64,000 nucleotides of DNA, taken from positions 1 to 64,000 of IMG/VR virus record IMGVR_UViG_3300042516_005475; one strand, given 5' to 3'. Both the position numbers and the translations under genes were made by a program. The notes under the pieces were generated by a model. The model worked only from the letters and a program-made list of their open reading frames with translations. It was not told the DNA's origin and did no database searches. Shown one piece after another: positions 11,046-46,580 of the stretch. The first letter of the stretch is position 1; each line of letters starts with the position of its first letter.

Positions 11046-11059
11046 AAATATTAATTACA

Positions 11060-11437: not shown

Positions 11438-11448
11438 CTAATTATTTA

Positions 11449-11886: not shown

Positions 11887-11908
11887 ATTTGTATATAGTT
11901 ATTATTAG

Positions 11909-12268: not shown

Positions 12269-12849
12269 TAGATAACCTTACTAGTAGCAATAAAGATATC
12301 ATCAGTAATAGCATAAAAAATCTCAACAACCTTCTTCATAAACTCTTCAACTTGCTGATGAGTCATGTTAGTCGAGAATGCAAAAGCAGGAGCCTTCTTA
12401 CCAGCAGTAACGTTAATAGCGGTATGACCTAGAGCAGCACCATTAACCAAATGAGTAATACTCACACTAGCCTTACCCTTGGGTTGAATAATACCATGCT
12501 GGTTATGCTCAGCATGAACAATCAAATCATCCCCATCAACCTCAATAGGTTTATTGATAATGGAAGTAAGAATATTTGCAATCTGAGTATTAAAGAGACG
12601 CTGAAATGAAACAGCCGCGAAAGCATCAATATTAGGAATTTCCCAGCAAAAGTTAACTGCGTCATCACTGTAAATGTAGTCATTATTAAGAATATCTTCT
12701 GTATCAATCATACCCTCAGCTTCAACATGCATCGGTGCACGGAATGCAACAATGTTGCCGATAGGCAAGGTACGATCTCGAAAGAACTTATAGGCAAAGC
12801 GCTTATGAATGAGATTGCCATCGTAGATCGGAATATTATTCAATATCAT
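12268..12849 (-). CDS. DUF366-like protein (BPL/LplA ligase-like fold)
   Basis: YDG..., IVAFRAPMHV, D.ED, SDDAVNF, QRL, DGDDL, KASVSI, HTAINV match the archaeal DUF366 motif order as recalled. Confidence 0.7.
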   Translation of the reverse strand: MILNNIPIYDGNLIHKRFAYKFFRDRTLPIGNIVAFRAPMHVEAEGMIDTEDILNNDYIYSDDAVNFCWEIPNIDAFAAVSFQRLFNTQIANILTSIINKPIEVDGDDLIVHAEHNQHGIIQPKGKASVSITHLVNGAALGHTAINVTAGKKAPAFAFSTNMTHQQVEEFMKKVVEIFYAITDDIFIATSKVI

Positions 12850-14225: not shown

Positions 14226-15028
14226 AGAGTTTTAGTCTTAATAGCCTTTAATCTTTGCAGAACAATGTCCTGCTTAGTATCAGAAATAGATACAGGAGAG
14301 TCTTTATATATCAAGCTGAAATAATTGGCTCCATCTTGAATATTCTTTTTCCAATCTGATCTTGGTCGAATAGTAGAATCGTTTTCTGAGCAAGCCAATT
14401 CTTCGAGAAAATCACTTGAATTAACAATATCAGGCCACCACCAATAGGCTGGTAGATACCCGTTTAGAACAGCTCTATAACTGTGTTCTACATGTTCCCA
14501 AGCATTAACAAAAGTCTCATCAAACAAACCAATTCTCATTAGGAGATCCCTGCTATAGTAACAGAAGCCACCTACGCAATTAGGGTTGAATGCTAGTTTA
14601 GTTTTACTATATTCAACTACACAGCGAGGGTCTGGCTTTTTATCTTTCTTATTAGCTGGACCGTGATATCCAAACATTAGGTGTTTAATGCCAGAATCTT
14701 TACTCGCCTTAATATATTCATCAAAGACGTTAGAGTCTTTAATAAAAATATCATCTTCAAGCAAAAAGATATCAGTGCAATCTTGGTTAAGCAAATGAAG
14801 CATAGCTTTATTTTTGCTACGACCTACACCAATATTCTTTTCATTCTTTAAGTATGTTAAATTCAGAGTATCTACTATTGATGGTAAAGGCTCATTACCA
14901 TCGTCTACAAGAACAACCTCATCAAGCCTATTAAAAGGTATTGTTTTAAGAACCTGTTTAAGGAATACAGGTCGATTGCAGGTAATAATACCCAGTCCGA
15001 TTTTTTGTTTTGTTTTAGTTTCTATCAT
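14210..15028 (-). CDS. GT2 glycosyltransferase
   Basis: IITCNRP, VLVDDG, NIGVGRSKN, FLLEDD, IGLFDE; start trimmed to MIETKTK. Confidence 0.85.
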   Translation of the reverse strand: MIETKTKQKIGLGIITCNRPVFLKQVLKTIPFNRLDEVVLVDDGNEPLPSIVDTLNLTYLKNEKNIGVGRSKNKAMLHLLNQDCTDIFLLEDDIFIKDSNVFDEYIKASKDSGIKHLMFGYHGPANKKDKKPDPRCVVEYSKTKLAFNPNCVGGFCYYSRDLLMRIGLFDETFVNAWEHVEHSYRAVLNGYLPAYWWWPDIVNSSDFLEELACSENDSTIRPRSDWKKNIQDGANYFSLIYKDSPVSISDTKQDIVLQRLKAIKTKTLWTSM

Positions 15029-15719
15029 CTTGACAAGTCCATATTTGGAGGTTAAACCGATTATTTTCCCAAGGCATAGCTGGATCACAGATTACTTCTG
15101 AGCAAGCATGCGGTAATCTAGATGGAAAAATACATAAGAAATTATTTTTAAGAGGGTATTCATAACATTTACCCTCATGCATAAACAGCTGGCTACCACC
15201 CTTAAGTAGAGATTCATCTTTGACAAGAGTATACGACATGGTAAAGACAGGTGTCATAGCTACTTCTTTACCTTTAATTGAAAGACCGTAAATTCCATCA
15301 TCAGAATGCCAATTATAATAATCACCATTACCGTAGCTAATAATATGAGTTCTTCCATTAAGACCATATCGAGAACCCAATTGAAACTCTCTACTCTTGC
15401 ATTGACCCATAAACTTGAGTATGCCTTGATGAAAGAAAAACTTATCAAGGTTGTTTAATGCATAGCCAGCTGGAATGTTATGATCAGGAAGCCAAACATC
15501 ACTACCCCAACAAAGATGGTTTAAATTATTCTTAGTTGTTTCAAAATCAGTAGAAGTATCTTGCTGTCTTGTTGCACCATCTCCAAATTTCCAAACAGGG
15601 GTACCAAAATACTGTTTGATATCAGTCATTTCTTTATAGATAGTATCAACAACAGCTCTTGGAAGAAAGTTTTCAGCCCATATAATAGGTGGGTCAGTTT
15701 CCTCATGTAGTAAGAACAT
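15015..15719 (-). CDS. 2OG-Fe(II) oxygenase (prolyl-hydroxylase-like)
   Basis: YNWHSD (HxD), GGSQL, IFPSRLPHAC, NRF; start trimmed to MFLLHEE. Confidence 0.8.
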   Translation of the reverse strand: MFLLHEETDPPIIWAENFLPRAVVDTIYKEMTDIKQYFGTPVWKFGDGATRQQDTSTDFETTKNNLNHLCWGSDVWLPDHNIPAGYALNNLDKFFFHQGILKFMGQCKSREFQLGSRYGLNGRTHIISYGNGDYYNWHSDDGIYGLSIKGKEVAMTPVFTMSYTLVKDESLLKGGSQLFMHEGKCYEYPLKNNFLCIFPSRLPHACSEVICDPAMPWENNRFNLQIWTCQDDRN

Positions 15720-15780
15720 ACATTTTATTTTAAAGTAAAAATTTGGATTTTCAACTAAATATACATATATATCTTTGATT

Positions 15781-16467
15781 ATGTCATCCAAAACTCCAAA
15801 GACATTTAATGTAGCAGAGAAGTTTGAGCTTTCTGAAAATCACAAACGGATTGTAGATGCTATATTAGATAGAGACAATAAGCTTATCTTTATTGATGGA
15901 CCAGCAGGTTCAGCCAAGACATACTGTGCTGTATTAGCAGCCTTAAAACTTGTTCAAAGAAAGAGCTTCAAGAGCATTCTTTATTTGAGAAGCATTGCTG
16001 AATGTTCTAGTCAAAAACTAGGTTCATTACCTGGAGAGTTGCATGAGAAGATTGGTCCGTTTGGAGCCCCATTTTTGGAAAAGCTTAGCGAAATGATTTC
16101 AGAGGCTGCAATTACTAAGTTAGCATCTGAAAGCGCTTTAGATATTCAGCCTCTTAACTTCTTGAGAGGTACTACATTCCATGATAAGATTGTATTGCTA
16201 GATGAGGCTCAAAATGCTGAACTCGATCAGCTCATCATTGTTCTAACCCGTCTTGGAGAACACGGAAAGCTTGTTGTTATCGGAGATAGTAACCAAGTAG
16301 ATATTAGAGATAAGAAGAGCTACGGAAATGTTGTAGCTAAGTTTAATAGTGAGGAATGTAAGAGTGTTGGCATTCAATCCTTCACTCTCACAGAAGATGA
16401 TATTAAAAGAAGTAAGATCTTAAAGTTTATTGTTGGTAAGCTTAATGAACTTAAGTCTAACCGTTGA
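15781..16467 (+). CDS. phoH: PhoH-family ATPase
   Basis: GPAGSAKT, LGSLPGEL, FLRGTTF, LDEAQN, TRLGE, GDSNQVD. Confidence 0.9.
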   Translation: MSSKTPKTFNVAEKFELSENHKRIVDAILDRDNKLIFIDGPAGSAKTYCAVLAALKLVQRKSFKSILYLRSIAECSSQKLGSLPGELHEKIGPFGAPFLEKLSEMISEAAITKLASESALDIQPLNFLRGTTFHDKIVLLDEAQNAELDQLIIVLTRLGEHGKLVVIGDSNQVDIRDKKSYGNVVAKFNSEECKSVGIQSFTLTEDDIKRSKILKFIVGKLNELKSNR

Positions 16468-16675
16468 TGTGAAACTTAAGAGCTTTGGAAATCTTTTCCA
16501 TAATCTTTTTAGGATGATTTCCTTCTTTTAAAAGTCTATTGTACTCGCTTTTGAAGCTTGTAATAAACTCTTCAGACAACTTTAGATTTCTTGGATAAAA
16601 TAATCGAGACTGTGTTCTTAACGGGGCATAGTTCTCGAGTAATTTATTGAAGTTGTTATTGAATTCTTTCATCAT
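16457..16675 (-). CDS. Hypothetical late protein (N-terminus MMKEFNNNFNKLLE)
   Basis: TAAATA box just upstream; shares the N-terminal signal family. Confidence 0.6.
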   Translation of the reverse strand: MMKEFNNNFNKLLENYAPLRTQSRLFYPRNLKLSEEFITSFKSEYNRLLKEGNHPKKIMEKISKALKFHING

Positions 16676-16680
16676 AGTAT

Positions 16681-16896
16681 TTATTTTTTGCAATGAAAAT
16701 TTAAAAACCAATTAGACTGTGCTTTTGTATGAGCAGTAGCCTTTTTGGTTTTTAGCTTTCTAGCCTTGCTACAAGTCATCTTGCCTTTACCGAATTTCTT
16801 GGTAGCTTTAGCTTTAAGAGTACCTTTACCACCTCGCGGAGTGGTGCGGGTGGTTTTTTCTAAAAGAGTAAAAAATCTCTTTTCGTACTTGTTCAC
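16681..16896 (-). CDS. Small basic late protein
   Basis: Lys/Arg-rich; GTG start 6 nt after TAAATA. Confidence 0.65.
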   Translation of the reverse strand: MNKYEKRFFTLLEKTTRTTPRGGKGTLKAKATKKFGKGKMTCSKARKLKTKKATAHTKAQSNWFLNFHCKK

Positions 16897-16937
16897 TACA
16901 ATTATTTATTCTTTTTAGTTTGTTCGCGCCAAAGATA

Positions 16938-17516
16938 TTAGTTTATTTTTTTTAAAAACGTATATAAACTCTCCCAATTATAAACTCTATCCCCTGTCCA
17001 GTTTTTATTGTATGGGTGATCCATAATTATACTTCGCAACCCAACTTGTTTACCGCTTTCTGCATGAGAAACACTATCCTCTAACCAAAAATAATTTTTA
17101 TCCTTGTACTGAACTTTAAGAAAATCTAATTTACTTTTTTTAAAATCTAAACTACAATTAATATAGTCAAACACATCTCCAAATAGGTGTTTTAAATTGT
17201 TTACTCTTAACCTTTGAGCGTATTTGTCAATATGTAAACAACTGATAACTTCAAACCTCCAACCATCTTCTGCTAATTTTTTTACAAATTCTTGAGCATC
17301 TCGGAAAGGCGGAAGAAAACCAACTGCTCCACTTTCATTAAACCTTGATATACAATCTAAGGCTACCTCTTCAGGTAGCCCATATCTAGCACCTTGATAA
17401 AAAATGTGGTCGGTGTTAGGTAATCTTTCATAGCCTCGCTCACTCATCCATACATCGAAAGCAAAAGACCAGTCAAGTAAAACACCGTCACAATCAGTGA
17501 TTAATTTCTTATGCAT
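16938..17516 (-). CDS. HAD-family 5'(3')-deoxyribonucleotidase-like phosphatase
   Basis: TDCDGVL (DxDG), WLEDS, HPYN. Confidence 0.8.
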   Translation of the reverse strand: MHKKLITDCDGVLLDWSFAFDVWMSERGYERLPNTDHIFYQGARYGLPEEVALDCISRFNESGAVGFLPPFRDAQEFVKKLAEDGWRFEVISCLHIDKYAQRLRVNNLKHLFGDVFDYINCSLDFKKSKLDFLKVQYKDKNYFWLEDSVSHAESGKQVGLRSIIMDHPYNKNWTGDRVYNWESLYTFLKKIN

Positions 17517-18234
17517 TTTTTATATACTTGTTTAATTCTTGCCAAGTACCTAAATCAATATAATCCTCTACTTCGATCCCCTTACTTAAATACAAAGGGG
17601 TACTTTTTATCTCGTTTAAAAGTACCCGCTGCTTCAAGGTACTTTTTTCCATAAATGTTATGCTTTGATCGAATGCTCTTTTTCTAAACGCAAAACTACA
17701 CCAAAAAGCATTAAATCTCTCTAATTTTTCTTGCGGCTTATCTTCATATAGTTCTATTATATTGTTTTCATTAATATAAAGGGAACCTTTTGTTTTAAGC
17801 ATAGCAGGGTTCTGTTCTCTTTTATAAAAAAAAGAGAATCCGGTTTCTGTAAGACTATTTTCTACAGATGTAAATAAATCCACCCCTAAACCTAGTTTCA
17901 TTAATGTGTCGGGTAGTAATATAACATTGTGTTCTCCAAACAAATGTTTTGCGCTTTTTATAGCACCTGTATATTCTTGCTCATTAGGGTTTTGAAAAGT
18001 AAAACTAATATCAAACCTATCTTTATACTTGGAAAGATAATTTACAACATCTAGTTTATTTTCGTTTATAACTATAACAAACTCTACATCTTTTCTACCG
18101 TAATCTCTAAAAAAATTAAACGAAAAATCAATTAGAGAAGAATCTTCATCGACTCTAAGGATTTCTTTTGAATATGGTAATTTTAACCTACTACCCTTAC
18201 CAGCTGCAGGTATAATTACAGTTAGTTTGCTCAT
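17509..18234 (-). CDS. Sugar-phosphate nucleotidyltransferase (NTP_transferase)
   Basis: IIPAAGKGSRL...SKE, LLPD, YEDKP, YIDLGTW. Confidence 0.85.
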   Translation of the reverse strand: MSKLTVIIPAAGKGSRLKLPYSKEILRVDEDSSLIDFSFNFFRDYGRKDVEFVIVINENKLDVVNYLSKYKDRFDISFTFQNPNEQEYTGAIKSAKHLFGEHNVILLPDTLMKLGLGVDLFTSVENSLTETGFSFFYKREQNPAMLKTKGSLYINENNIIELYEDKPQEKLERFNAFWCSFAFRKRAFDQSITFMEKSTLKQRVLLNEIKSTPLYLSKGIEVEDYIDLGTWQELNKYIKNA

Positions 18235-18242
18235 ATGTCTCT

Positions 18243-18959
18243 TTATTTATTTTTTTCAGGTTTCTTTTGCTCAGGTCTTGCCAAGGCTTCTAAGGCCTCA
18301 ATATCTTCCATGCCGAGATTTGGATCGTTAAAGATATTAGCATTAGGGTCCATTGAGTCTCCATCCGCATCAAGATAGAGCTTCATGATCTGAATACGTT
18401 CATTACGCTCACCGTATGTTTCAATAATAGGTGGTCGATCATCAGCATGAAAATAATTAGATTTTGGATTATCTCTATTTTCCATTGCAAACACCTTAAA
18501 GAGATTATCAATCTCAACTCGCATAAAAGGGTTAGCATCTCTCATACCATCTTCTTGAATATCAGGAGTCTTGGCTGCTCTTGTAATTGGGATATAGAAA
18601 ATAATATCAATATGTTTTAGAGCATCACGAACAACTGGGATACACTTCTTAATAAAGTCAAAATCAATATCTCCAACGTTGTGATGATAGGCCCACATAG
18701 AATACACGAGATTATCTAGCGGACAACGATCAAATACAATTCTATCACTTTTGCGAGTACCTTCTAGTTGCTTGACCATAAAGTCAAGAATAGCCTGTTG
18801 GGATTCTTTAGTAGTTTTTGAGCTATGGGTTAAACCTTTTTCAACTAAAACATCTCTATATGTCTTTTCTGGAGATTTATAGTTAGTCCACTCAGCAAGA
18901 AAATCTTTAATCAGAGTAGATTTGCCCATGCACTGGGCACCGGAAATGGCAATTCTCAT
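18243..18959 (-). CDS. P-loop nucleotide kinase (AAA_28/dNMP-kinase-like)
   Basis: ISGAQCMGKST, FDRCPLDNLVY, EDGMR. Confidence 0.75.
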   Translation of the reverse strand: MRIAISGAQCMGKSTLIKDFLAEWTNYKSPEKTYRDVLVEKGLTHSSKTTKESQQAILDFMVKQLEGTRKSDRIVFDRCPLDNLVYSMWAYHHNVGDIDFDFIKKCIPVVRDALKHIDIIFYIPITRAAKTPDIQEDGMRDANPFMRVEIDNLFKVFAMENRDNPKSNYFHADDRPPIIETYGERNERIQIMKLYLDADGDSMDPNANIFNDPNLGMEDIEALEALARPEQKKPEKNK

Positions 18960-19660: not shown

Positions 19661-20392
19661 TTAAACCTTGAGAGCTTTATTCCACAAGACCAATTGCAAT
19701 CGAGGACTAAAGTTAAAACCATGCTTCTTGCAAACCTCTGCTACCCAAGGAGCAACAGCATTATGCTCATCTCGAGAACCACAGCAAGGCATCAACCAAA
19801 TTTGATCTTCAGTAATACTAAAAGGTTTGATATACTTTTCGATAATCTCTTCAACATCACTATCTTTCTGCACAACAAACTTAAAGTAAGAGTAGATACT
19901 AGCGTGGTAAGCAATAACCTCTGGAACGTATCTCTTCTCTTCTGGATCTCCGTTAGTAGACAACTTAGGAGACACAGTAAAAGTAGCATTTATACTTTCC
20001 CAAAAACTTGAAGGATTAATCGTACAGTTAGTTTCAAAATCAATAACAGGATAGAAATCGAACTTTCTGAAAAAGGCTTCAATAAACTCAATCAAAGCCT
20101 TTTGCTGAATAAGAGGTTCACCACCAGTAATCTTAAGAACATGATTGCCTTTCAACTTATTTAGGTAATCATTATCTTCAAAGATCTTAAAGATCTCTTC
20201 AAAGGTTAGCTTATTCTTCTTAGACCAGCTAACATAGCTATCACAACCAAACGGAGAATCAGGAGACTTAAACCCGATGCAAGTCAAGTTGCACATTGCC
20301 AATCGCATGAAGATGCTTGGCTTACCAACCAAATGACCTTCACCTTCGATAGTTTCAAAGACAAAGTCATCAGAGAGAAATAATGAACTCAT
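19661..20392 (-). CDS. queE: 7-carboxy-7-deazaguanine synthase (radical SAM)
   Basis: FETIEGEG, FMRLAMCNLTC...CDS, ITGGEP, ETN, TVSPK, SPRLQ. Confidence 0.9.
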   Translation of the reverse strand: MSSLFLSDDFVFETIEGEGHLVGKPSIFMRLAMCNLTCIGFKSPDSPFGCDSYVSWSKKNKLTFEEIFKIFEDNDYLNKLKGNHVLKITGGEPLIQQKALIEFIEAFFRKFDFYPVIDFETNCTINPSSFWESINATFTVSPKLSTNGDPEEKRYVPEVIAYHASIYSYFKFVVQKDSDVEEIIEKYIKPFSITEDQIWLMPCCGSRDEHNAVAPWVAEVCKKHGFNFSPRLQLVLWNKALKV

Positions 20393-20422: not shown

Positions 20423-21118
20423 TCAAGCCCATTTAGTACCAAAGTCCCAGGTACTAGGACGATTCTTACCACCGACTGGAACCCCTTGCGGAGGAGCATC
20501 AGTCTGCTTAGGGGTAACCCTAACTGGTTTATTTGTGTCATAAGCCAAGGCTTCAGTCTGCTTTTCAGACTTAGCAGGCGGAGCCCAGACAGGTTCAGCA
20601 GTCTTACCCTTCTTGCCTTTGCCTTTAGCAGGCGCAGCCTCAGCTTCATCAGCAACTTCTGCTGTAGATTCTTGAGCAGTTTCAGCAGAATAAATAGCAG
20701 AGTTCTTCTCATGCTCAAACACCTCAACAGAATGAGCTCGAACTCGACCGCTAGTCTTATGCTTCACGTAGCTATCTGCAGCATTAAAGCAATACTTTGC
20801 AAACAACTCAATTCCAACCCCTTCATCCATAACAACGATTGAGGCAGCTCCAGCCTTTTCAAGAGCCTCAAACTCTTTCATAGCAGGGTCATTCTTAGCA
20901 AGAACGAGAGTATGATCAAACTTCTCCTGCAAGAATCCCTTCAATTCGTCAAAGTCTCCGAAGTCAACAACCCAATTGTTGCCGTCAAGAGAATCAGAAG
21001 TAAACGTAAATTTACCAACCAATCGATAACCATGAATGAATCTGCAATGGGACTTTGCATTAGGCTGACGAAATGCAGCACTTCCGAGTTCAATAACCTT
21101 CGTGGAATAATATCTCAT
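20423..21118 (-). CDS. queD: 6-carboxy-tetrahydropterin synthase with a low-complexity C-terminal extension
   Basis: SHCRFIHGY, WVVDFG, FDHT, EHEKNSA; start trimmed to MRYYSTK. Confidence 0.85.
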   Translation of the reverse strand: MRYYSTKVIELGSAAFRQPNAKSHCRFIHGYRLVGKFTFTSDSLDGNNWVVDFGDFDELKGFLQEKFDHTLVLAKNDPAMKEFEALEKAGAASIVVMDEGVGIELFAKYCFNAADSYVKHKTSGRVRAHSVEVFEHEKNSAIYSAETAQESTAEVADEAEAAPAKGKGKKGKTAEPVWAPPAKSEKQTEALAYDTNKPVRVTPKQTDAPPQGVPVGGKNRPSTWDFGTKWA

Positions 21119-21157
21119 ACTCAGATATGTTATGAACATTTTTCCTAGAATCAAGCC

Positions 21158-21191: not shown

Positions 21192-21848
21192 ATGAATGAT
21201 GAGATTAGAGAGAAAGATTACCTCCTCCCGACTGCTAACAGTTCTATGGCTTTGACAGAAGAGCAAAAGCTTGCTATTATCGACAAGGGTGCTAAGGCAT
21301 ATGAGACTTTTTTGGATGCTCTTCGCATTGACTGGCGTAATGATCCGAATAGCGCAGGTACTCCTCGACGTGTTGCAAAGTCGTACGTGTTTGATTTAAT
21401 CTCTGGGTGCTATGAGGCTCCGCCGAAGATTACTTCTTTTCCTGCTGATGGTTATGATGGCATCGTCTCTCAGACGAATATTCCGTTGACTAGTATGTGT
21501 AGCCATCACCATTTGGCCTTTACTGGATTGGTGCATGTTGCTTATATTCCTAGTCTTGAAGGTCGTGTTATTGGCTTGAGTAAGCTCAATCGTATTGTTG
21601 AGTTTTATGGTCGTCGACCTCAGATTCAAGAAGGTTTGACGATGCAGATTCATAAGGCTATTAACGAGGTCTGCGAGCATAACAAGGGTGTTGCAGTTGT
21701 TGTTAAGGCTCAGCATACTTGTGCTTGTAATCGAGGTGTGAGACATCAAGGTTGTTATATGGTTACATCTAAGCTGTCTGGAGACTTCTATGATGACGAG
21801 AAGACTCGCAAGGAGTTTTACGACTTTATTAAAATGGCTGAAGAGTAG
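21192..21848 (+). CDS. folE: GTP cyclohydrolase I
   Basis: TPRRVAK, SMCSHH, GLSKLNRIV, RPQIQE, HTCACNRGV. Confidence 0.95.
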   Translation: MNDEIREKDYLLPTANSSMALTEEQKLAIIDKGAKAYETFLDALRIDWRNDPNSAGTPRRVAKSYVFDLISGCYEAPPKITSFPADGYDGIVSQTNIPLTSMCSHHHLAFTGLVHVAYIPSLEGRVIGLSKLNRIVEFYGRRPQIQEGLTMQIHKAINEVCEHNKGVAVVVKAQHTCACNRGVRHQGCYMVTSKLSGDFYDDEKTRKEFYDFIKMAEE

Positions 21849-22425: not shown

Positions 22426-23532
22426 ATGAGTGATGATACATCTTTCGATATGGAGTTGCCAGACATTCCAATGCCTGGTCAAGAAATTAATACCGACATT
22501 GAAGACAAGATACAAGTAGGGTTTAAGTTTAGCTTTGTTGGAGCTGGTCAAGGTGGTTCAAGAATCGCTGAAACCTTTCACAAGCTTGGCTACAAGAGAA
22601 CCTGTGTGCTTAATACCGCTCAGCAAGACTTGGCAACAATTGAAGTTCCAAACAAGCTTAAGATTGGTACTGATTCTGGAGCAGGTAAGAATAGAGAAGT
22701 TGCTAAACAGGCTTTAATTGAACAGAGAGAAGATGTTCTTGATCTATTCAGAAAGTCTTTTGCTGGTAACTTTGATCGTATTTTTGTTTGCGCTGGTGCT
22801 GGTGGTGGTACTGGTTCTGGAACAACAACTGAGCTAATTAAGATTGCTAAAGACTACCAAGATTCAATTAAATCTACTTCTGAAAAGGTTGGTGTATTTT
22901 TAGCCTTGCCAAAGAACACTGAAGGTAAGAAGTGTGCTGAGAACGCTCTTAAGACTTTAACTGAGGTTCTTGAGCTCGTAGATCAAGGAATTGTTTCTCC
23001 ATTGGTTATTATTGATAATGAGAAGATTAATACAATCTATCCAAGATTGTCTATTAATCAGTTCTGGAATACTTCTAACAACAGCATCTGTTCTCTATTC
23101 AATCTATTCAATAACATTATTACAAAGAACAGTAGCTATACTTCTTTTGATAATAAGGATTATAAGACAGTGCTTGATAGTGGTATTATTGTATTCGGTG
23201 CAACCCAAGTTACTCAATGGTCTGACGGTACTGAGATTTCTAAAGCTATGAGAGATAACCTCAAGAAGAATATCTTGTCTGGTGGCATTGATCTCGGTAC
23301 TGGTAACATTGCTGCTGCAGTTGTTGTTGGAGATTCAAATGCTCTTGACAATATTCCACAAGAGTATCTTGATCAGGCTTTTGAGCAGCTTACCCGTACA
23401 TTGAAAAACAACTCAACTGTACACCAAGGTATCTATAAAGGTAACAAGGCTGGCTTGAGTATCTTTACTGCAATCGGTGGTTTAGGTAAACCAACCGCTA
23501 AAATAGAAGAGCTTAAGAAGTTATCTACTTAG
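22426..23532 (+). CDS. Tubulin/FtsZ-superfamily GTPase (TubZ/PhuZ/CetZ-like)
   Basis: VGAGQGGSRI (T1), GAGKN (T3), GAGGGTGSG signature, IIDNEK, FDNKD (T7-like). Confidence 0.9.
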   Translation: MSDDTSFDMELPDIPMPGQEINTDIEDKIQVGFKFSFVGAGQGGSRIAETFHKLGYKRTCVLNTAQQDLATIEVPNKLKIGTDSGAGKNREVAKQALIEQREDVLDLFRKSFAGNFDRIFVCAGAGGGTGSGTTTELIKIAKDYQDSIKSTSEKVGVFLALPKNTEGKKCAENALKTLTEVLELVDQGIVSPLVIIDNEKINTIYPRLSINQFWNTSNNSICSLFNLFNNIITKNSSYTSFDNKDYKTVLDSGIIVFGATQVTQWSDGTEISKAMRDNLKKNILSGGIDLGTGNIAAAVVVGDSNALDNIPQEYLDQAFEQLTRTLKNNSTVHQGIYKGNKAGLSIFTAIGGLGKPTAKIEELKKLST

Positions 23533-36326: not shown

Positions 36327-37472
36327 ATGAGTAAAGAAACGCAAAAAGCAATTGATAACGTATTTGAAGCATTAAACAAAATTAATCCTGAAGCAAACTA
36401 TCTTTCAGAACAAACGCTTTCTGAAGTTAGTGAATTTATCGATACAGGCTGTTATGTACTTAACGCCATTATGTCAGGGTCTCTCCTAACTGGAGGTATT
36501 CCAAAGGGCCGAATCACAGGGTTTATTGGACCATCTCAGACAGGTAAGACCTATATTATCAACAAGATTCTCGGCAATGCTCAGAAGAAGGGAATGATCC
36601 CAGTCATTTTCGATACTGAAATTGCTGTTGAGAGTCGTGGTGCAGAAAATGTTGGTCTTGATCCTAAAAAGACAAAGCATGTACCTGTTGATACTGTTGA
36701 AAATTGCCGTAATCAGATCTTTGCTCTACTCGATGGTATTGAAAAGAATCCTAGTTTAAAGGGTAAGTTTATTATTAGCATTGATTCGCTAGGTAACTTG
36801 TCTGCACAGAAAGAACTCAATGACGCTGAGGCTGGTAAGTCAGCTGGCGATATGGGTTTGAGAGCCAAGCAATTGAAGTCAATGCTCAGAACTTTGACTT
36901 ACAAGGCTGCTCGTACTGGAACTACTATTCTATTCAGTAACCATACTTACGATGACCCTGCTGCTATGTATCCGACGCTTGTAAAGAAGCAGTCTGGTGG
37001 CTCTGGTCCAATTTACATGGCTAGTTTGCTTGTGCAATTAGCCAGCCGTTCTGAAAAGCAGGACGATAAAAACGAAAACGATAAGATGCTCCCTGAGGCT
37101 AAAAACTATAGTGGTGTTACTCTCAGAGCTCTTACTGTAAAAAACAGATTTGTGCCTCCTTATCTTGAAGCAGAAATGTATCTGAACTTCCTTACTGGCC
37201 TCGATAAGTATGCTGGCATTCTCGGTCTTGCTGTTAACCATGGTGTTATTATTCAAACCGGAAGCACGTATACTTTGCCAGATGGAACCAAGTTAGGTTA
37301 CTATAGCAAATTTAAGGAGGACAAAAATTTCTGGGACAATAAAATCATCCCTGAAGTAGAAAAGATAATTAAGGAAAAATACAAATATGGTAACTCCAGC
37401 ACAAGTGCTAACATCGAAATCGATGAAGAGTTTCCAGATGAGGGAGGGGGTGTTGAAGATGGCCAAGACTAA
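36327..37472 (+). CDS. uvsX: RecA-like recombinase, UvsX
   Basis: GPSQTGKT, FDTE, IDSLGNL, DMGLRAK, NHTY, SGGSG, KNRF. Confidence 0.92.
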   Translation: MSKETQKAIDNVFEALNKINPEANYLSEQTLSEVSEFIDTGCYVLNAIMSGSLLTGGIPKGRITGFIGPSQTGKTYIINKILGNAQKKGMIPVIFDTEIAVESRGAENVGLDPKKTKHVPVDTVENCRNQIFALLDGIEKNPSLKGKFIISIDSLGNLSAQKELNDAEAGKSAGDMGLRAKQLKSMLRTLTYKAARTGTTILFSNHTYDDPAAMYPTLVKKQSGGSGPIYMASLLVQLASRSEKQDDKNENDKMLPEAKNYSGVTLRALTVKNRFVPPYLEAEMYLNFLTGLDKYAGILGLAVNHGVIIQTGSTYTLPDGTKLGYYSKFKEDKNFWDNKIIPEVEKIIKEKYKYGNSSTSANIEIDEEFPDEGGGVEDGQD

Positions 37473-37543: not shown

Positions 37544-37579
37544 AAGGGCAACGATATAAAACTTGTTGCCCTTAATTTT
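37544..37579 (+). terminator. Hairpin, probable terminator after uvsX, overlapping the queC -35 box
   Basis: aagggcaacga...ttgttgccctt followed by aatttt. Confidence 0.5.
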
Positions 37580-37594
37580 GTTTTCATATATACT
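37566..37594 (+). promoter_or_regulatory. Sigma70-type promoter of the queC operon
   Basis: TTGCCC-N17-TATACT, with ATG 37601 6 nt downstream. Confidence 0.6.
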
Positions 37595-37600
37595 GTGTGT

Positions 37601-38311
37601 ATGAGTAAGTGTGTAATTCCTGTTAGTGGTGGCATTGATTCAACGGTCATGCTTTATGATGCTGCTGCATCTAAGACCTATTCAGATATCTTCGCGATTA
37701 GTTTTTATTACGGTCAGCGTCATGCTACGAATGAGCTGGCTTGTGCAACTAAATCTGTTAATACTTTAAAGGAAAAGTACCCAGAGATTAATATCTATCA
37801 CCGAAACATTGATCTAAGCTTCTTTGGTGAGATTGCTATTAGCTCTTCAATTACCAATAATGATATTGCTGTTGCTCAGACTAAAGATGTTCTTGGTGAT
37901 CCACAGCCGGTTAATTATGTACCGTTTCGTAATCTAATGATGCTTTCTATTCTCTGCTCTTTTGCAGAGGCTCATGGTGCTCGAGATGTTTACTATGGTA
38001 GTGCTCTTGTTGATTCTCAGGCTGGGTATTGGGACTCTAGTAATGAATTCTACTTGAATCTCGCTTCTGTTATTGGTCTCAATCGTAAGAATAAGATTTC
38101 TATTATTACACCGTTGATTAAGCTTGATAAGAAAGATATTATCAAGTTAGGTGATGAGCGTGGGGTTGACTTTAAGAGTACCTGGACTTGTTATGAAGGT
38201 AAAGAACAAGCCTGTGGATATTGTCCAGCCTGCTCTAGTCGAATCAAAGGCTTTATGGATTATATGATGGTTGACCCTATTGAATACAGCCGAAAGATTA
38301 AATTTATCTAA
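37601..38311 (+). CDS. queC: 7-cyano-7-deazaguanine synthase
   Basis: SGGIDS, YGQRH, YVPFRN, TWTCY...CGYCPAC. Confidence 0.95.
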   Translation: MSKCVIPVSGGIDSTVMLYDAAASKTYSDIFAISFYYGQRHATNELACATKSVNTLKEKYPEINIYHRNIDLSFFGEIAISSSITNNDIAVAQTKDVLGDPQPVNYVPFRNLMMLSILCSFAEAHGARDVYYGSALVDSQAGYWDSSNEFYLNLASVIGLNRKNKISIITPLIKLDKKDIIKLGDERGVDFKSTWTCYEGKEQACGYCPACSSRIKGFMDYMMVDPIEYSRKIKFI

Positions 38312-38312
38312 T

Positions 38313-38963
38313 ATGTGTGCAATATTTGGTTCTGCTTCTAAAGAAAAATTTGTTAAACTATACGAGTTAAATAAACCTAGAGGTGTATCTGCTTCCAGTT
38401 ATTTAACTATAACTGATAATGGTTGGATTGATTGTTACAAGAGCGCTGGTGCATTTGATGAAAATAGATTAAAATCTAGTAAGTTATATCTTGGTCATTG
38501 CCAGGCTCCAACCACAGTTAATCAGAGCTTTAACCCTGAACTAGCTCACCCATTTTATTGGAATCGCTTTTATGTCGCTCACAATGGTATTATTACCAAT
38601 GTAGAAGAGCTTTGTGAAAAGTACTTTATTAAGCTTGAAGATATTAAAGTTGACTCTAGTATCATACCTGCTTTGATAGGTTACTTCTATCATAAAAAGA
38701 ACTCTGACCAACTTCAAGACATTATTAAGCGTGTTGCTGAGTTGCTCAAAGGTACTTTTGCTTGTTATATTGTAGATGAAAGATCTAATCGAATATTTCT
38801 TATTCGATCAGGTTCTACCTTGTTCTATGATCAAGATAGCAATATCTCCTCTACTAAGTTTGATAATGCTATTCCTTTTGAAGAAGGTAGGGTAGGTGAA
38901 ATTGTTAAAAACAAGATTATATATCACAATACCTTTATTTGTAACTCCCCATTTTTTATATGA
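38313..38963 (+). CDS. Class II (Ntn) glutamine amidotransferase
   Basis: M-C-AIFG start (Cys1 nucleophile), GHCQAPT, AHPF, HNGII, VDS. Confidence 0.8.
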   Translation: MCAIFGSASKEKFVKLYELNKPRGVSASSYLTITDNGWIDCYKSAGAFDENRLKSSKLYLGHCQAPTTVNQSFNPELAHPFYWNRFYVAHNGIITNVEELCEKYFIKLEDIKVDSSIIPALIGYFYHKKNSDQLQDIIKRVAELLKGTFACYIVDERSNRIFLIRSGSTLFYDQDSNISSTKFDNAIPFEEGRVGEIVKNKIIYHNTFICNSPFFI

Positions 38964-39694
38964 AAATTTTATTTTATACTTGTACTAAACAGAACGTAGA
39001 TGCATTTCTTAAGTTCTCTCCATTAATTAAATGTCTTGGTCTTGGCAACGATTTGCCTTACAAGCCTAAGAAAGCCTCTCTTAATGAACCTCTCGAACTC
39101 AATTACAAGTTTAAGAATCTTCGTTATGGTGCTGATCTGATTGTTTGGACTGAAAATACTGATAGTCTCAGTGTTCAGTATAACAAGGCTAAGAAGTATT
39201 ATGATCAATACGATGCTATTATATTCTTGCACGATGATGTGTTTATTACTGATGCCTTCTTAATTGAGAAGCTCCAGGTAGCCTTTGCACAATTTGACGT
39301 TGTTGGATTGGCAGGTGGAGCTGATATTAGTCTTAAGAGCTATGGCTTGTGGCATATGATGTGTGATCCAAAGACCTTTAGTGGTGCAGTTTCACATTTT
39401 GATAATTCTGGAAAAGAGTTTGTTACAGCCTTTGGACCGTTTGGCAAGCGTTGTTTGCTTTTAGATGGTTTGTTCTTGGCTGTAAACACTAAGACAGCTA
39501 AGGCTGTTAATTGGGACGAAAATGTAAAGTTCCACCATTACGACTTGCTATTCTGCTTGGAAGCTAATAAACTCAAGCTGAAGCTAGGTACTGCTCCTAT
39601 TTACGTGACTCATGAATCTCCTGGATTAAAAGGATTTAGTGAGGAATTTAAGAAGAGTGATGCTTACTTCAAAGAATACTTTAACAAATACTAA
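38960..39694 (+). CDS. GT-A-fold glycosyltransferase-like protein
   Basis: SLSVQYN, FLHDDV, VVGLAG, LDGLFLA, WDE..FHHYD, HESPG. Confidence 0.75.
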   Translation: MKILFYTCTKQNVDAFLKFSPLIKCLGLGNDLPYKPKKASLNEPLELNYKFKNLRYGADLIVWTENTDSLSVQYNKAKKYYDQYDAIIFLHDDVFITDAFLIEKLQVAFAQFDVVGLAGGADISLKSYGLWHMMCDPKTFSGAVSHFDNSGKEFVTAFGPFGKRCLLLDGLFLAVNTKTAKAVNWDENVKFHHYDLLFCLEANKLKLKLGTAPIYVTHESPGLKGFSEEFKKSDAYFKEYFNKY

Positions 39695-41046
39695 TGGAAA
39701 AGAAATCAAAAACGAGCAAGATAGATAGCGACTTTTTTGAGTACGTTATTCTATTTAACTGTCTGACTGATGAGACCTACATGGGTACAGTTGTAGAGTA
39801 CTTGAAGCCAGATCTCTTTAATAGTAAAGATGTTCAGAACATCGTAGAGATTATTAAAGAATACTTTAACAAGCGTTCTAATGTACCTACTCTTACTGAA
39901 GTTAAGACTTATCTTGTAACTGATGAGCTAAAAAACTCTTTCAAGCGTCTTGTTGAGCAATTCAAGACGCTTGAAAAGTCTAATAACAAGCAAGAGCTTC
40001 TTGAGAATACTGAAAGGTTTATTAAAGAGAAGACTGTATTTAATACAATGCTTGAAGTCACTGATATGTGTACTAAGGCAGAAGTTATTGATACAAATAT
40101 CGTCTTGGATAAGTTCGAGCATGCATGTTCTATCTCGCTTAATAATGAGAAGGGTCACGACTACTTTGCTGATATTGATAAGCATTGTAAAGATCTAGTC
40201 AAGGTTGATAATCATATTAAGACAGGTTGGGAATGGCTCGATAAGAAGCTTGGTGGTGGATTCTTGCAAGATGGTAGAGCAATCTATGTCTTCGCAGGCG
40301 AAACTAACGTAGGTAAGAGTATCTTTTTGCAGAACCTGGCTGTTAATATTGCGAATCAGAATAAGAGTGTTATTATCTTGTCTCTTGAAATGTCTGAGAT
40401 GGCTTACTGTAAACGTATTTCATCTAACATTACTCAGATTCCATTTAATGACTTGCGTAATAATGTTGATAGTCTAAAGCAGACTGTTACTAATAAGAAA
40501 CTTAATCTACCGAGCTCTCGATTGCTTGTTAAAGAGTTTCCACCTAATACTGTTACTCCAGGTCAGATGACTGCATTCATTAAGAAGCTGCAACAGTCTG
40601 GGTATAAGTTCGATGCTATTGTTATTGACTATTTGAATCTACTTAATGCCCCAAAAGGGGATAACTCTTATGAGCGAATTAAGTATACTGCTGAGCAAGT
40701 TCGTGCAATGAGCTATGTTTTTAATTGTCCAATTATTACAGCAACTCAGTTGAATCGCAGTGGTTACAATCAAGAGAATCCTGGACTAGAGTCTATTAGT
40801 GAAAGTATTGGTACTGCTGCTACTGCTGATTGTGTGATGGGTCTATGGCAGCTCGATGAAGATAAAGAGCTCGGTGTTATTAAAATGAGTTTGTTGAAGA
40901 ACCGTTATGGTCCTAACTTCGGTACAATCAACATGAAAATTAACTACCCAACTCTTACTCTTGAAGAGGATAACACATTGAATGCAGATGAAGAGATCGT
41001 AAATACCTCAGAAGCGCTCAAAGCGTTATCTGAAGAAATGACATGA
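39694..41046 (+). CDS. gp41: Replicative DnaB-like helicase, gp41
   Basis: GETNVGKS, SLEMSE, KEFP, IDYLNL, TATQLNRSG, ISES, KNRYG. Confidence 0.93.
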   Translation: MEKKSKTSKIDSDFFEYVILFNCLTDETYMGTVVEYLKPDLFNSKDVQNIVEIIKEYFNKRSNVPTLTEVKTYLVTDELKNSFKRLVEQFKTLEKSNNKQELLENTERFIKEKTVFNTMLEVTDMCTKAEVIDTNIVLDKFEHACSISLNNEKGHDYFADIDKHCKDLVKVDNHIKTGWEWLDKKLGGGFLQDGRAIYVFAGETNVGKSIFLQNLAVNIANQNKSVIILSLEMSEMAYCKRISSNITQIPFNDLRNNVDSLKQTVTNKKLNLPSSRLLVKEFPPNTVTPGQMTAFIKKLQQSGYKFDAIVIDYLNLLNAPKGDNSYERIKYTAEQVRAMSYVFNCPIITATQLNRSGYNQENPGLESISESIGTAATADCVMGLWQLDEDKELGVIKMSLLKNRYGPNFGTINMKINYPTLTLEEDNTLNADEEIVNTSEALKALSEEMT

Positions 41047-41948
41047 AAAACGAACTGCTAATTATTAATCAAGATTTAGACGGAGCTGGCTGTTACACTG
41101 CTTACAGCTGGTTTCATAAAGACGCACCTGAAGTATTTTTTGTAACGCAAAAGAAGGCTGAAAGTATGATCAAAGGTTTCTTTGATCGTCATTCTTTGCC
41201 TGACTTTAAACGAATCACTGTTCTCGGTCTAGATGTTTCTGGATTCGAAGACTTTCTTGACTGTAAAAATGTAATTATTATTACAGCTCATAAGAAGATG
41301 GTTGAGCTAAAGTACAACTTTAAGCTCGCAACTGCCTTAACTAAGATTGATGGTTCATCTACTCGATTAACCTTTAATATTTTTAAGAAGTTATACCCTG
41401 ATATTAAGCCAACAGAGCATCAAAAGCTTTTGGTTGTTTTAATTGATGATGCAGTTAGTAAGACATATGCACTAAAACAATCTAAACAACTTGAGACGTT
41501 GTATTGGAACTCAAAGTCTTTCGAAAGAGTCTTTAACTTCTATCAAGACTTTCGCAAAGGCTTCTTTCAATTCAATGACTATCAATTGAGACAAATCGAA
41601 TACTTTCAAAAGAAGTGCGATACTATTATCGACTCTCTAGCATTGTATCATACTAATTTACCTGTTAAGAATAAAAAGTATAATTTTTATGCTACATTTG
41701 CTGAAGGCTGTTTTCAGGAAGTAGCTGACTATATTTTTAACGAATATAGCGCTGATGTTGTTGCAGTAGTTAGCCTAGAGGCTGGCAAGGTATATTTTAG
41801 ACGTAGCAAAGTTTGTGATGTTAAGGTAAATAACCTGGCTAAGACTCTCTGTGATGGTGACGGCTATGAATATGCCGCTAGTGGTAGCCTAACAGATAAG
41901 TTTGTAGAATTTACAAAGCTGTTAAAGCGCCATAAAAGTCAAATATGA
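41043..41948 (+). CDS. DHH/DHHA1-fold protein with degenerate catalytic motifs
   Basis: NQDLDGAGC (motif I), LGLD, TAHK in place of DHH, GDGYEYAASG in place of GGGH..AAG. Confidence 0.6.
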   Translation: MKNELLIINQDLDGAGCYTAYSWFHKDAPEVFFVTQKKAESMIKGFFDRHSLPDFKRITVLGLDVSGFEDFLDCKNVIIITAHKKMVELKYNFKLATALTKIDGSSTRLTFNIFKKLYPDIKPTEHQKLLVVLIDDAVSKTYALKQSKQLETLYWNSKSFERVFNFYQDFRKGFFQFNDYQLRQIEYFQKKCDTIIDSLALYHTNLPVKNKKYNFYATFAEGCFQEVADYIFNEYSADVVAVVSLEAGKVYFRRSKVCDVKVNNLAKTLCDGDGYEYAASGSLTDKFVEFTKLLKRHKSQI

Positions 41949-45707: not shown

Positions 45708-46580
45708 ATGCATACACCTGGTGTGGCCATCTTCGGTGGGGGCTATGTAGGCTCCAACCTCTTTAAAGAACTACAAAAATCATACAAGCTTGAATCTTTT
45801 TTAATTGATAGACAGAAGCTTGATTATACAAACGAAAGAGCTCTTAGAGAATTTTTCGAAGCCTGTGAGCCAGACTACGTTGTTAACTGTGTCGGCTTTA
45901 CTGGCCGACCTAATGTTGATGCCTGTGAACTCAACAAAGAGGAAACATACAAGCTAAACGTTCAATTGCCTATCTTGATGGCTAAGCTTTGTGAAGAGTA
46001 TAGAGCAAGCTTGTATCATATTTCTTCTGGTTGTATCTATTCAGGTTATGAATTTCCGTATAGCGAAACTCACATACCTGACTTTGGGGCTTTTAGTGAT
46101 AAAAGTTCTTTCTATTCTAAGACAAAGCACGCTGCTGAATTGGCATTGGCTCAGTTTAACAATGTAAAGATTTTTCGTATTAGAATGCCGTTTTGTGGTG
46201 AACACACAGATCGCAACTATCTATTGAAGATTCGTAAGTATAGCAACCTTCTAAACGAAGTTAATTCAAAGACTCATATCCCTGGATTCGTTGAAATCTT
46301 GAAAAAGCTTCTTGAAACCAATAATGAGAGAACTCCTAAGTACACTCTCAATGTTTGTAACCCTTACCCTCTCAGAACAGATCAAGTTGTAGAGATTTAC
46401 CGCAAGCATAATTTTGATAACCCTAGTTGGAAGTTTATTAGCTATGATGAATTGCCAATTAAGGCTAATCGTTCAAATTGTGTTATGGATTGTACAAAGC
46501 TGAAGGACTTTGGTTTTGAATTCGAAACAGAAGAAGAGGCTATCACCAAGAGTATCATTTCCTTGAGAGACAATGCTTAA
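45708..46580 (+). CDS. NDP-sugar epimerase/reductase (RmlD or NRS/ER-like, rhamnose synthesis)
   Basis: GGGYVG Rossmann motif, GFTGRPNVDACE, SSGCIY, YSKTK, RIRMP. Confidence 0.8.
   Translation: MHTPGVAIFGGGYVGSNLFKELQKSYKLESFLIDRQKLDYTNERALREFFEACEPDYVVNCVGFTGRPNVDACELNKEETYKLNVQLPILMAKLCEEYRASLYHISSGCIYSGYEFPYSETHIPDFGAFSDKSSFYSKTKHAAELALAQFNNVKIFRIRMPFCGEHTDRNYLLKIRKYSNLLNEVNSKTHIPGFVEILKKLLETNNERTPKYTLNVCNPYPLRTDQVVEIYRKHNFDNPSWKFISYDELPIKANRSNCVMDCTKLKDFGFEFETEEEAITKSIISLRDNA

What the first reader, a model, noticed from the sequence alone, without database searches (positions are those of the whole stretch)
37601..41046. queC-amidotransferase-glycosyltransferase cassette coupled to the helicase gene: possible glycosylated 7-deazaguanine
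Seen: queC, a stand-alone Ntn amidotransferase 1 nt later, a GT-A protein overlapping by ATGA, and gp41 overlapping by TAATG, all under one promoter. Known: fused GAT-QueC proteins yield archaeosine (G+), and in T4 the 41-uvsX-43 neighbourhood houses the DNA-modification genes beta-gt and 42. Inference: a split GAT/QueC makes G+ or a related base, and the linked GT may add a sugar. That would be a DNA hypermodification I do not know to have been described.
Basis: partly seen in the sequence, partly recalled or inferred. Interest (0 to 1): 0.75.

Follow-up and report, generated by a model that had tools for sequence, protein, structure and literature searches.

The report
Deazaguanine DNA-modification genes, bystander glycosyltransferase
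This lake-water T4-like phage carries the full gene set for replacing guanine in its DNA with a formylated preQ1 base already known from a Flavobacterium phage. The neighbouring glycosyltransferase stays beside the helicase gene even in sister phages that lack the whole pathway, so a sugar-bearing deazaguanine is unlikely.

Summary
The gene order is real: queC (37601-38311), a stand-alone class II Ntn amidotransferase (38313-38963), a GT-A glycosyltransferase (38960-39694) and gp41 (39694-41046), joined by a 1-nt gap, ATGA and TAATG.

The interpretation mostly fails. The same 230-kb genome also encodes FolE, QueD and QueE (window 19.6-21.8 kb). Across the record ends it encodes a DpdA3 DNA transglycosylase, a DpdN-type formyltransferase, a kinase and a bimodular QueF. 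This is the gene set and local order of Flavobacterium phage immuto_2-6A, whose guanines are all replaced by fdPreQ1. QueF needs preQ0, so archaeosine is unlikely.

The same amidotransferase family follows QueC in KVP40-like, pf16 and a jumbo Vibrio phage. Two of these have measured DNA, with dPreQ1 and no dG+. It is most likely a glutamine-dependent ammonia donor for QueC.

GT-gp41 is the invariant pair. All 75 related loci with queC and the amidotransferase keep it. So do at least three sister T4-like phages that lack queC and the amidotransferase; the one long contig among them (118.7 kb, collinear) lacks every deazaguanine gene. Bacterial homologues of the glycosyltransferase sit in unrelated contexts.

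A glycosylated deazaguanine is not excluded but is improbable (about 5%).

The parts
37601..38311 (+). queC, 7-cyano-7-deazaguanine (preQ0) synthase, a PP-loop ATPase
   Evidence: PF06508 1.4e-53. TIGR00364 154.9 bits against a cut-off of 150.3. The SGGIDS PP-loop and the C...CGYCPAC zinc cluster are read.
38313..38963 (+). Stand-alone class II (Ntn) amidotransferase-like protein, family phrog_12378; inferred ammonia donor for QueC
   Evidence: GATase_6 2e-8. phrog_12378 8e-16. The family profile matches the GlmS glutaminase domain at 4.4e-16. Cys2, HNG and VDS are invariant, and the canonical Arg is replaced by Gln. It follows QueC in nt-1/KVP40-like phages, Vibrio 2.275.O and pf16.
38960..39694 (+). 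GT-A glycosyltransferase (PF13712), acceptor unknown; always directly upstream of gp41
   Evidence: PF13712 5.6e-11. AF2 model and Foldseek matches. Invariant HDD motif. The GT-gp41 pair is present in all related loci and in sister phages without the deazaguanine genes.
39694..41046 (+). gp41-type DnaB-like replicative helicase
   Evidence: DnaB_C 1.2e-30
41043..41948 (+). orf301, next member of the overlapping gene chain; its homologues in relatives carry a DHH domain
37544..37573 (+). Terminator-like hairpin with a T run after uvsX
   Evidence: An RNA-library contig ends at 37546, which is weak support.
37566..37594 (+). Sigma70-like promoter match just upstream of queC (consensus match only)
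36327..37472 (+). uvsX recombinase, upstream neighbour
   Evidence: RecA 1.5e-18
19661..20392 (-). queE, 7-carboxy-7-deazaguanine synthase (radical SAM)
   Evidence: phrog_2076 4.1e-44. All best NCBIfam hits are QueE models.
20423..21139 (-). queD, 6-carboxytetrahydropterin synthase
   Evidence: PTPS 7.9e-16
21192..21848 (+). folE, GTP cyclohydrolase I
   Evidence: PF01227 7e-48
18243..18959 (-). AAA_28/dNK-like kinase beside the queE cluster. A paralogue sits between DpdN and QueF outside the window. Its role in the pathway is inferred only.

Best explanation
queC and the amidotransferase are two parts of a complete phage pathway that replaces guanine in the phage's own DNA with a preQ1-derived 7-deazaguanine.

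Proposed pathway:
1. FolE, QueD and QueE make CDG from GTP.
2. QueC turns CDG into preQ0.
3. The stand-alone Ntn amidotransferase most likely hydrolyses glutamine and hands the ammonia to QueC. This would resemble asparagine synthetase B, which joins a class II amidotransferase to a PP-loop synthetase. This step is inferred.
4. QueF reduces preQ0 to preQ1.
5. The DpdN-type formyltransferase gives the formylated form.
6. DpdA3 puts the base into DNA.

The expected product is fdPreQ1, at or near complete replacement, as measured in Flavobacterium phage immuto_2-6A. The product is inferred from gene content.

The glycosyltransferase is a separate conserved gene of this T4-like lineage. It is paired with gp41, uses an NDP-sugar, and has an unknown acceptor. 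It does not depend on the deazaguanine pathway.

Sub-probabilities:
- preQ1-type DNA base: 0.8
- fdPreQ1 specifically: 0.6
- amidotransferase serves QueC: 0.55
- glycosyltransferase independent of deazaguanine: 0.85
For: Gene set:
- FolE, QueD, QueE.
- QueC.
- DpdA3 at G000:226049-226882. It is 45% identical to the immuto DNA guanine transglycosylase (3e-63) and to the Campylobacter CP220 group (2e-55).
- Formyltransferase at G000:226886-227815. PF00551 2e-13, and 45% identical to immuto DpdN.
- Bimodular QueF at G000:228515-229405. It is 47% identical to immuto QueF and has the ESKSIKLY motif and the Cys.
- A phosphoribosyltransferase nearby.

Order and conservation:
- The order DpdA3-DpdN-kinase-QueF is the same as in immuto and in four related records.
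- immuto DNA carries fdPreQ1 at complete replacement (PMC10516641).
- DpdA3 is present in all 4 related records that reach its expected place.

Amidotransferase:
- The N-terminal Cys is conserved, and the family profile matches the GlmS, PurF and AsnB glutaminase domains.
- It lies directly after QueC in KVP40-like phages, Vibrio 2.275.O and pf16, most of which also have QueF.

Glycosyltransferase:
- GT-gp41 is adjacent in all about 160 related loci examined, while insertions occur between queC and the amidotransferase and between the amidotransferase and the glycosyltransferase.
- Sister phages G014:C2, L226/L227 and L228 have uvsX-GT-gp41 without queC or the amidotransferase. G014:C2 lacks all deazaguanine genes at three syntenic places.
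- Bacterial homologues at 31-45% identity have no deazaguanine neighbours.
- The genome has no ThyA-family hydroxymethylase.
Against: - No chemistry was measured. The base is inferred from gene content.
- The function of DpdN is itself only predicted in the literature. The protein here also has an extra C-terminal domain of about 110 aa that immuto lacks.
- In the amidotransferase, the Arg that binds glutamine's carboxylate in GlmS and PurF is an invariant Gln. Glutamine may therefore not be its substrate.
- immuto makes fdPreQ1 without any such amidotransferase (one search gave no Flavobacterium phage hit).
- Within the deazaguanine-bearing clade, queC, the amidotransferase and the glycosyltransferase are never separated by more than a few kb. 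One fragment keeps the three together in another order, queC-GT-GAT. A recruited role for the glycosyltransferase is therefore not excluded.
Confidence: 0.6

Rival explanations
1. One reading: the glycosyltransferase adds a sugar to the 7-deazaguanine base, in DNA or on a precursor, giving a glycosylated deazaguanine.
For: - Conserved placement with queC and the amidotransferase in every deazaguanine-bearing relative.
- ATGA overlap with the amidotransferase.
- One fragment with the three genes in another order.
- An RmlD-like sugar-nucleotide reductase is conserved in the same replication module.
- No glycosylated deazaguanine was found in the literature search, so it would be new.
Against: - GT-gp41 persists in sister phages without queC, the amidotransferase or any deazaguanine gene.
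- The closest cellular homologues are in unrelated contexts. One sits next to flagellin and a TPR protein.
- A formylated aminomethyl group leaves no usual acceptor.
- PF13712 glycosyltransferases are common in phages.
- immuto encodes glycosyltransferases, yet only fdPreQ1 was found in its DNA.
- Tight junctions are ordinary in this genome.
Confidence: 0.05
2. The split amidotransferase plus QueC acts like fused Gat-QueC and makes archaeosine (dG+) in DNA.
For: Fused Gat-QueC of phage 9g gives dG+ (PMC6884629). nt-1 carries the split pair and has traces of dG+.
Against: - QueF and DpdN are present and need preQ0 and preQ1.
- The amidotransferase is barely similar to the 9g Gat domain (E 0.002) and belongs to a different PHROG.
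- phi-Grn1 and phi-ST2 carry the split pair and show zero dG+ (Table 1).
- Another KVP40-like phage with QueF has 15% dPreQ1 (PMC12028318). That paper calls the deazaguanine cluster core to the group; I did not check the amidotransferase in that phage itself.
Confidence: 0.05
3. The amidotransferase works with the glycosyltransferase rather than with QueC. Together they would form a two-part enzyme that makes an amino sugar or glycosylamine from an NDP-sugar and glutamine-derived ammonia.
For: The two genes overlap (ATGA) in most relatives, while queC and the amidotransferase are often split by 1-3.9 kb of inserted genes.
Against: - The amidotransferase follows QueC with no glycosyltransferase in three other phage lineages.
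- In 22 of 75 loci a reverse-strand ORF separates the amidotransferase from the glycosyltransferase.
- The glycosyltransferase occurs without the amidotransferase in the sister lineage.
Confidence: 0.07
4. The deazaguanine genes are auxiliary metabolic genes that boost host queuosine in tRNA and do not modify DNA.
For: No canonical TGT (PF01702) and no DpdA2 were found.
Against: A clear DpdA3 orthologue is adjacent to DpdN and QueF, as in immuto. According to PMC10516641, DpdA is the signature of DNA deazaguanine.
Confidence: 0.05

Closest known systems
[quoted passage not shown]
   Same: The same seven enzymes. DpdA3 is 45% identical, DpdN 45%, QueF 47% and FolE 58%. The local order DpdA3-DpdN-kinase-QueF is the same, and a small phosphoribosyltransferase lies nearby.
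   Different: - immuto is not T4-like; it has a family A polymerase.
- immuto has no QueC-linked amidotransferase and no homologue of this glycosyltransferase.
- Here the genes are split over three places, and DpdN carries an extra C-terminal domain.
KVP40-like Vibrio phages (nt-1, VH7D, phi-Grn1, phi-ST2), Pseudomonas phage pf16, Vibrio phage 2.275.O
   Same: QueC is immediately followed by the same stand-alone Ntn amidotransferase family, phrog_12378. Most also encode QueF.
   Different: nt-1 has DpdA2; pf16 has an uncharacterised 440-aa gene at the corresponding place. Measured replacement in the KVP40-like phages is low to partial. No glycosylated base is reported and no homologue of this glycosyltransferase is present. 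The amidotransferase gene is annotated as hypothetical, and the papers read here do not discuss it.
Phage 9g Gat-QueC (dG+ synthase)
   Same: A class II amidotransferase combined with QueC chemistry.
   Different: It is fused rather than split. Its Gat domain keeps the Arg and is only marginally similar. 9g has no QueF, and its product is dG+.
Asparagine synthetase B / GlmS / PurF (class II Ntn amidotransferases)
   Same: N-terminal Cys, an Asn-Gly oxyanion motif and an Asp. The family profile matches their glutaminase domains. AsnB pairs such a domain with a PP-loop synthetase of the QueC superfamily; this last point rests on established knowledge.
   Different: It is stand-alone, at 216 aa. 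The Arg that binds glutamine is Gln. A conserved C-terminal PFF[IL] tail is present.
T4 alpha- and beta-glucosyltransferases
   Same: A phage glycosyltransferase encoded among replication genes. The T4 gene order is from my own knowledge.
   Different: The T4 enzymes are GT-B folds that act on 5-hydroxymethylcytosine. This protein is GT-A, and the genome has no ThyA-family hydroxymethylase.
Majastridin (2qgi) and PF13712 glycosyltransferases, including LOS outer-core transferases of Acinetobacter
   Same: Best structural match, with UDP bound, the same GT-A core and a DxD motif.
   Different: About 16% identity. No acceptor is known for majastridin. The family gives no hint of DNA as a substrate.

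Membership tests
QueC (preQ0 synthase) | PP-loop SGGxDS motif and a C-terminal four-Cys zinc site | tested here: met
   SGGIDS and C...CGYCPAC are read in the translation.
QueC (preQ0 synthase) | Score above the curated equivalog cut-off | tested here: met
   TIGR00364 154.9 bits against 150.3. PF06508 182 bits.
Class II (Ntn) glutamine amidotransferase | Cys as first residue after Met removal | tested here: met
   MC[GA]IFGS in 46 of 49 distinct clade sequences. Cys2 is invariant in alignment A2.
Class II (Ntn) glutamine amidotransferase | Asn-Gly oxyanion hole and Asp that binds the glutamine amino group | tested here: met
   HNG and (V)DS are invariant. They align with GlmS.
Class II (Ntn) glutamine amidotransferase | Arg that binds the glutamine alpha-carboxylate (GlmS/PurF Arg73) | tested here: not met
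   An invariant Gln (GHxQxPT) aligns to the GlmS Arg.
Gat-QueC type G+ synthase | Amidotransferase fused to QueC, or a clear orthologue of that Gat domain | tested here: not met
   The genes are separate. BLASTP to 9g Gat-QueC gives E 0.002 over 78 aa. The PHROG differs.
Gat-QueC type G+ synthase | preQ0 is the end of the free-base pathway, with no nitrile reductase | tested here: not met
   A bimodular QueF with motif and Cys is present.
DpdA3-dependent fdPreQ1 system | DpdA3 transglycosylase | tested here: met
   45% identity to immuto and CP220 DpdA3, at 3e-63 and 2e-55. Phage phiST DpdA3 finds it at 1e-6.
DpdA3-dependent fdPreQ1 system | DpdN formyltransferase next to DpdA3 | tested here: met
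   PF00551 2e-13. 45% identity to immuto DpdN over residues 2-179. It starts 4 nt after DpdA3. There is an extra C-terminal domain.
DpdA3-dependent fdPreQ1 system | [quoted passage not shown] | tested here: met
DpdA3-dependent fdPreQ1 system | fdPreQ1 replaces dG in virion DNA | not testable with these tools
   Needs nucleoside LC-MS/MS.
GT-A glycosyltransferase (PF13712) | GT-A fold with a DxD metal and nucleotide-sugar motif | tested here: met
   pLDDT 85. 2qgi at E 2.6e-10. HDD invariant.
DNA base glycosyltransferase | Presence depends on a modified base with an acceptor group in the same genome | tested here: not met
   The glycosyltransferase is kept in phages without deazaguanine genes, and G014:C2 has no ThyA-family gene. 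The window's own genome has no ThyA-family hydroxymethylase.
DNA base glycosyltransferase | Transfers a sugar to DNA | not testable with these tools
   Needs an enzyme assay.

The most novel reading that the evidence does not exclude
In the deazaguanine-bearing branch, the ancestral gp41-linked glycosyltransferase was recruited, possibly together with the amidotransferase. It would add a sugar to the preQ1-type base or its precursor, giving a glycosylated 7-deazaguanine in DNA that has not been described.
Probability: 0.05. Interest if true: 0.85.

Novelty: new member of a known kind. Interest (0 to 1): 0.35.

Why it matters
If the prediction holds, complete replacement of guanine by an fdPreQ1-type base is not a curiosity of one Flavobacterium phage. 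It would be a trait of a large, uncultured T4-like lineage of lakes and oceans. IMG/VR holds hundreds of contigs of it, and the best gp41 match among 50,697 phage records is 31% identical. That bears on restriction evasion in nature and on how such DNA behaves in sequencing.

A second, modest point concerns the amidotransferase. A stand-alone Ntn amidotransferase family that follows QueC in four phage lineages has gone unremarked. It may make phage preQ0 synthesis depend on glutamine.

The headline idea of a glycosylated deazaguanine is not supported.

Tried and rejected
- Canonical TGT (PF01702) and DpdA2 (phrog_10773) searches of the whole genome found nothing. DpdA3 was found only with the phiST protein as query.
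- Megablast of the cassette and tblastn of the glycosyltransferase against 50,697 phage records found nothing.
- I looked for a hydroxymethyl-pyrimidine route as an alternative acceptor. There is no ThyA-family gene, only ThyX.
- I looked for a full rhamnose pathway. There is an RmlD-like gene and one other SDR, but no RmlC.
- I considered the glycosyltransferase as a substitute phosphoribosyltransferase. This is rejected because a phosphoribosyltransferase is present.
- I tried to test co-transcription with metatranscriptomes. Only a few contigs of 150-370 nt lie on the stretch, none across queC, the amidotransferase or most of the glycosyltransferase gene; one 178-nt contig crosses the glycosyltransferase-gp41 junction.
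I did not pursue it, since the profile match to GlmS sufficed.
- The supplements of PMC10516641 and the 2024 MMBR review were not held.
- I did not build a rooted tree. The outgroup status of the sister lineage that lacks the deazaguanine genes rests on identity levels only.


Full report
Observation. The window is the first 64 kb of a 230,047-bp IMG/VR virus record that CheckV rates 100% complete. It comes from lake water and is seen in many samples. The region reads gp43, orf128, uvsX, queC, amidotransferase, glycosyltransferase, gp41, orf301 on the + strand.

Pfam supports each name: QueC 1.4e-53, GATase_6 2e-8, Glyco_tranf_2_5 5.6e-11, DnaB_C 1.2e-30. A terminator-like hairpin follows uvsX and a sigma70-like match precedes queC. 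Such matches are no more frequent than in shuffled sequence, however.

By my own crude ORF calls, tight junctions occur at 46% of same-strand gene pairs in this genome. The overlapping chain also continues three genes beyond gp41.

The rest of the pathway. The window also holds queE, queD and folE at 19.6-21.8 kb. No canonical TGT and no DpdA2 exist in the genome. The DpdA3 protein of Cellulophaga phage phiST does find a 277-aa gene at G000:226049-226882. This gene is 45% identical to the annotated DNA guanine transglycosylase of Flavobacterium phage immuto_2-6A and to the Campylobacter CP220 group.

Four nucleotides later comes a formyltransferase, 45% identical to immuto DpdN. An AAA_28 kinase follows. 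After that comes a bimodular QueF, 47% identical to immuto QueF, with the ESKSIKLY motif and the catalytic Cys. A small phosphoribosyltransferase lies 4 kb upstream.

The record is circularly permuted. In a collinear relative, the homologues of its first and last genes are neighbours. This cluster therefore lies about 20 kb from queE and 38 kb from queC. The order DpdA3-DpdN-kinase-QueF is that of immuto and of four related records. DNA of immuto has all dG replaced by fdPreQ1, and DpdA3 phages are the ones with complete replacement (PMC10516641). The predicted base here is therefore fdPreQ1 or a close preQ1 derivative, not archaeosine.

The amidotransferase. It starts with Met-Cys, keeps the HNG and VDS motifs, and its family profile matches the glutaminase domains of GlmS (4e-16), PurF and AsnB. 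The Arg that binds glutamine in those enzymes is an invariant Gln, and the C-terminus ends in a conserved PFF[IL].

It is only marginally similar to the Gat domain of 9g Gat-QueC. It belongs to phrog_12378, the family of a 'hypothetical protein' that directly follows QueC in three other lineages:
- nt-1, KVP40, VH7D, phi-Grn1 and phi-ST2;
- Vibrio phage 2.275.O;
- Pseudomonas phage pf16.

Most of these also encode QueF. phi-Grn1 and phi-ST2 have measured dPreQ1 and mdPreQ1 and no dG+. Another KVP40-like phage with QueF has 15% dPreQ1. The split pair therefore yields preQ0, and the link to QueC is real.

My proposed role, an ammonia donor from glutamine as in AsnB-type enzymes, is an inference. 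The missing Arg weakens it, and so does the fact that immuto manages without such a protein.

The glycosyltransferase. It is a GT-A enzyme with an invariant HDD motif. Its best structural matches are majastridin with UDP, StrF and rhamnosyltransferases. It has no PHROG and no tblastn hit in 50,697 phage records. It does have hundreds of relatives on IMG/VR contigs and 367 protein clusters.

I examined about 85 loci fetched through the glycosyltransferase and 75 fetched through the amidotransferase. The order in them is always uvsX, queC, amidotransferase, glycosyltransferase, gp41. Inserted genes occur between uvsX and queC, between queC and the amidotransferase (0-3.9 kb), and in 22 loci between the amidotransferase and the glycosyltransferase. 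The glycosyltransferase and gp41 are never separated.

The decisive cases come from the genome collection. A 118.7-kb contig, G014:C2, is collinear with this genome and shares 53 proteins with it; its gp43 is 39% identical. It reads uvsX, a reverse-strand ORF, glycosyltransferase, gp41. It lacks queC, the amidotransferase, FolE, QueD, QueE, QueF, DpdA3 and DpdN at all three syntenic places. It also has no ThyA-family gene. Two further members of that lineage show the same arrangement.

Seventeen of twenty cellular homologues, at 31-45% identity, have no related neighbour. The six I checked are mostly high-GC bacterial DNA, and one lies next to flagellin and a TPR protein. PF13712 glycosyltransferases are common in phages, and this window holds two more GT2 genes. 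The glycosyltransferase therefore does not need the deazaguanine pathway.

What still speaks for a link. Within the deazaguanine-bearing branch, the three genes never part. One fragment has them in the order queC, glycosyltransferase, amidotransferase. An RmlD-like gene is conserved nearby. I leave about 5% for a recruited role on the base.

Novelty. The pathway is a new member of the known DpdA3/DpdN kind. Cui et al. already listed three uncultured Caudovirales phages with DpdN and the full pathway. I could not check whether these belong to this clade.

Three things are new here. The pathway sits on a T4-like backbone with no cultured relative; the best gp41 hit is 31% identical. The lineage is large. 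The QueC-linked amidotransferase family has not been described. No paper describing a glycosylated deazaguanine in DNA was found.

Noticed in passing
window 22426-23532 (+): A tubulin/TubZ-like gene (Tubulin 1.8e-17, TubZ-like C-terminal domain) sits right after folE in a T4-like genome of 230 kb.
   Followed up: no
L023:6383-7336 and many marine relatives (gap of about 950 nt between queC and the amidotransferase): An IMPDH/GMP-reductase-family gene (PF00478 2e-60) is inserted between queC and the amidotransferase. A GMP reductase would drain the guanine nucleotide pool and release ammonia, which fits a phage that replaces G. In L022 a dCMP deaminase occupies that place.
   Followed up: partly
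window 18243-18959 (-) and G000:227825-228511 (+): Two AAA_28/dNK-like kinase paralogues each lie beside a deazaguanine gene cluster. immuto has a 'thymidylate kinase' at the same place. The sister phage G014:C2, which has no deazaguanine genes, keeps only the first. With the nearby phosphoribosyltransferase (G000:221404-221853), this hints at a nucleotide-level route for the modified base.
   Followed up: partly
G000:226886-227815 (residues about 195-309): The DpdN-type formyltransferase has an extra C-terminal domain that is absent from immuto DpdN. It is similar to a hypothetical protein of Microcystis phage Mel-JY01. In record G001 it is encoded about 0.9 kb apart from the formyltransferase part. 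It has no Pfam match.
   Followed up: partly
window 12846-18234 (-): A block of sugar-related genes: a 459-aa double GT2, a 272-aa GT2, a 2OG-Fe(II) oxygenase, then PhoH on the opposite (+) strand, a HAD hydrolase and an NTP_transferase. It lies just upstream of the kinase and queE.
   Followed up: no
window 38313-38963 and alignment A2: The amidotransferase family ends in a conserved C-terminal PFF[IL] (NPYFFL in nt-1). This could be a docking tail for a partner protein.
   Followed up: no
L147 (G014:C21) 10051-15684: A second contig of the same Bacteriovoracaceae MAG carries a distant DpdA3-like gene (26%), a queC-like gene (27%) and folE (37%) with no other T4-like gene. I cannot tell whether it belongs to another element or to the missing part of the sister phage.
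   Followed up: partly
L116:4293-6588: In a Chthoniobacteraceae MAG, a 241-aa homologue of the glycosyltransferase (43%) lies next to a flagellin gene, a TPR protein and a methyltransferase. In L114 the domain is the C-terminal part of a 582-aa protein. Protein glycosylation is a possible family function.
   Followed up: partly
window 45708-46580 (+): An RmlD-like NAD-dependent reductase/epimerase is conserved inside the replication module of most relatives. L023 adds a GDP-mannose-dehydratase-like gene. No RmlC is present in the genome.
   Followed up: partly
L165:5687-6565 (-): In one subclade, a 292-aa reverse-strand ORF with no Pfam match is inserted between the amidotransferase and the glycosyltransferase.
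   Followed up: partly
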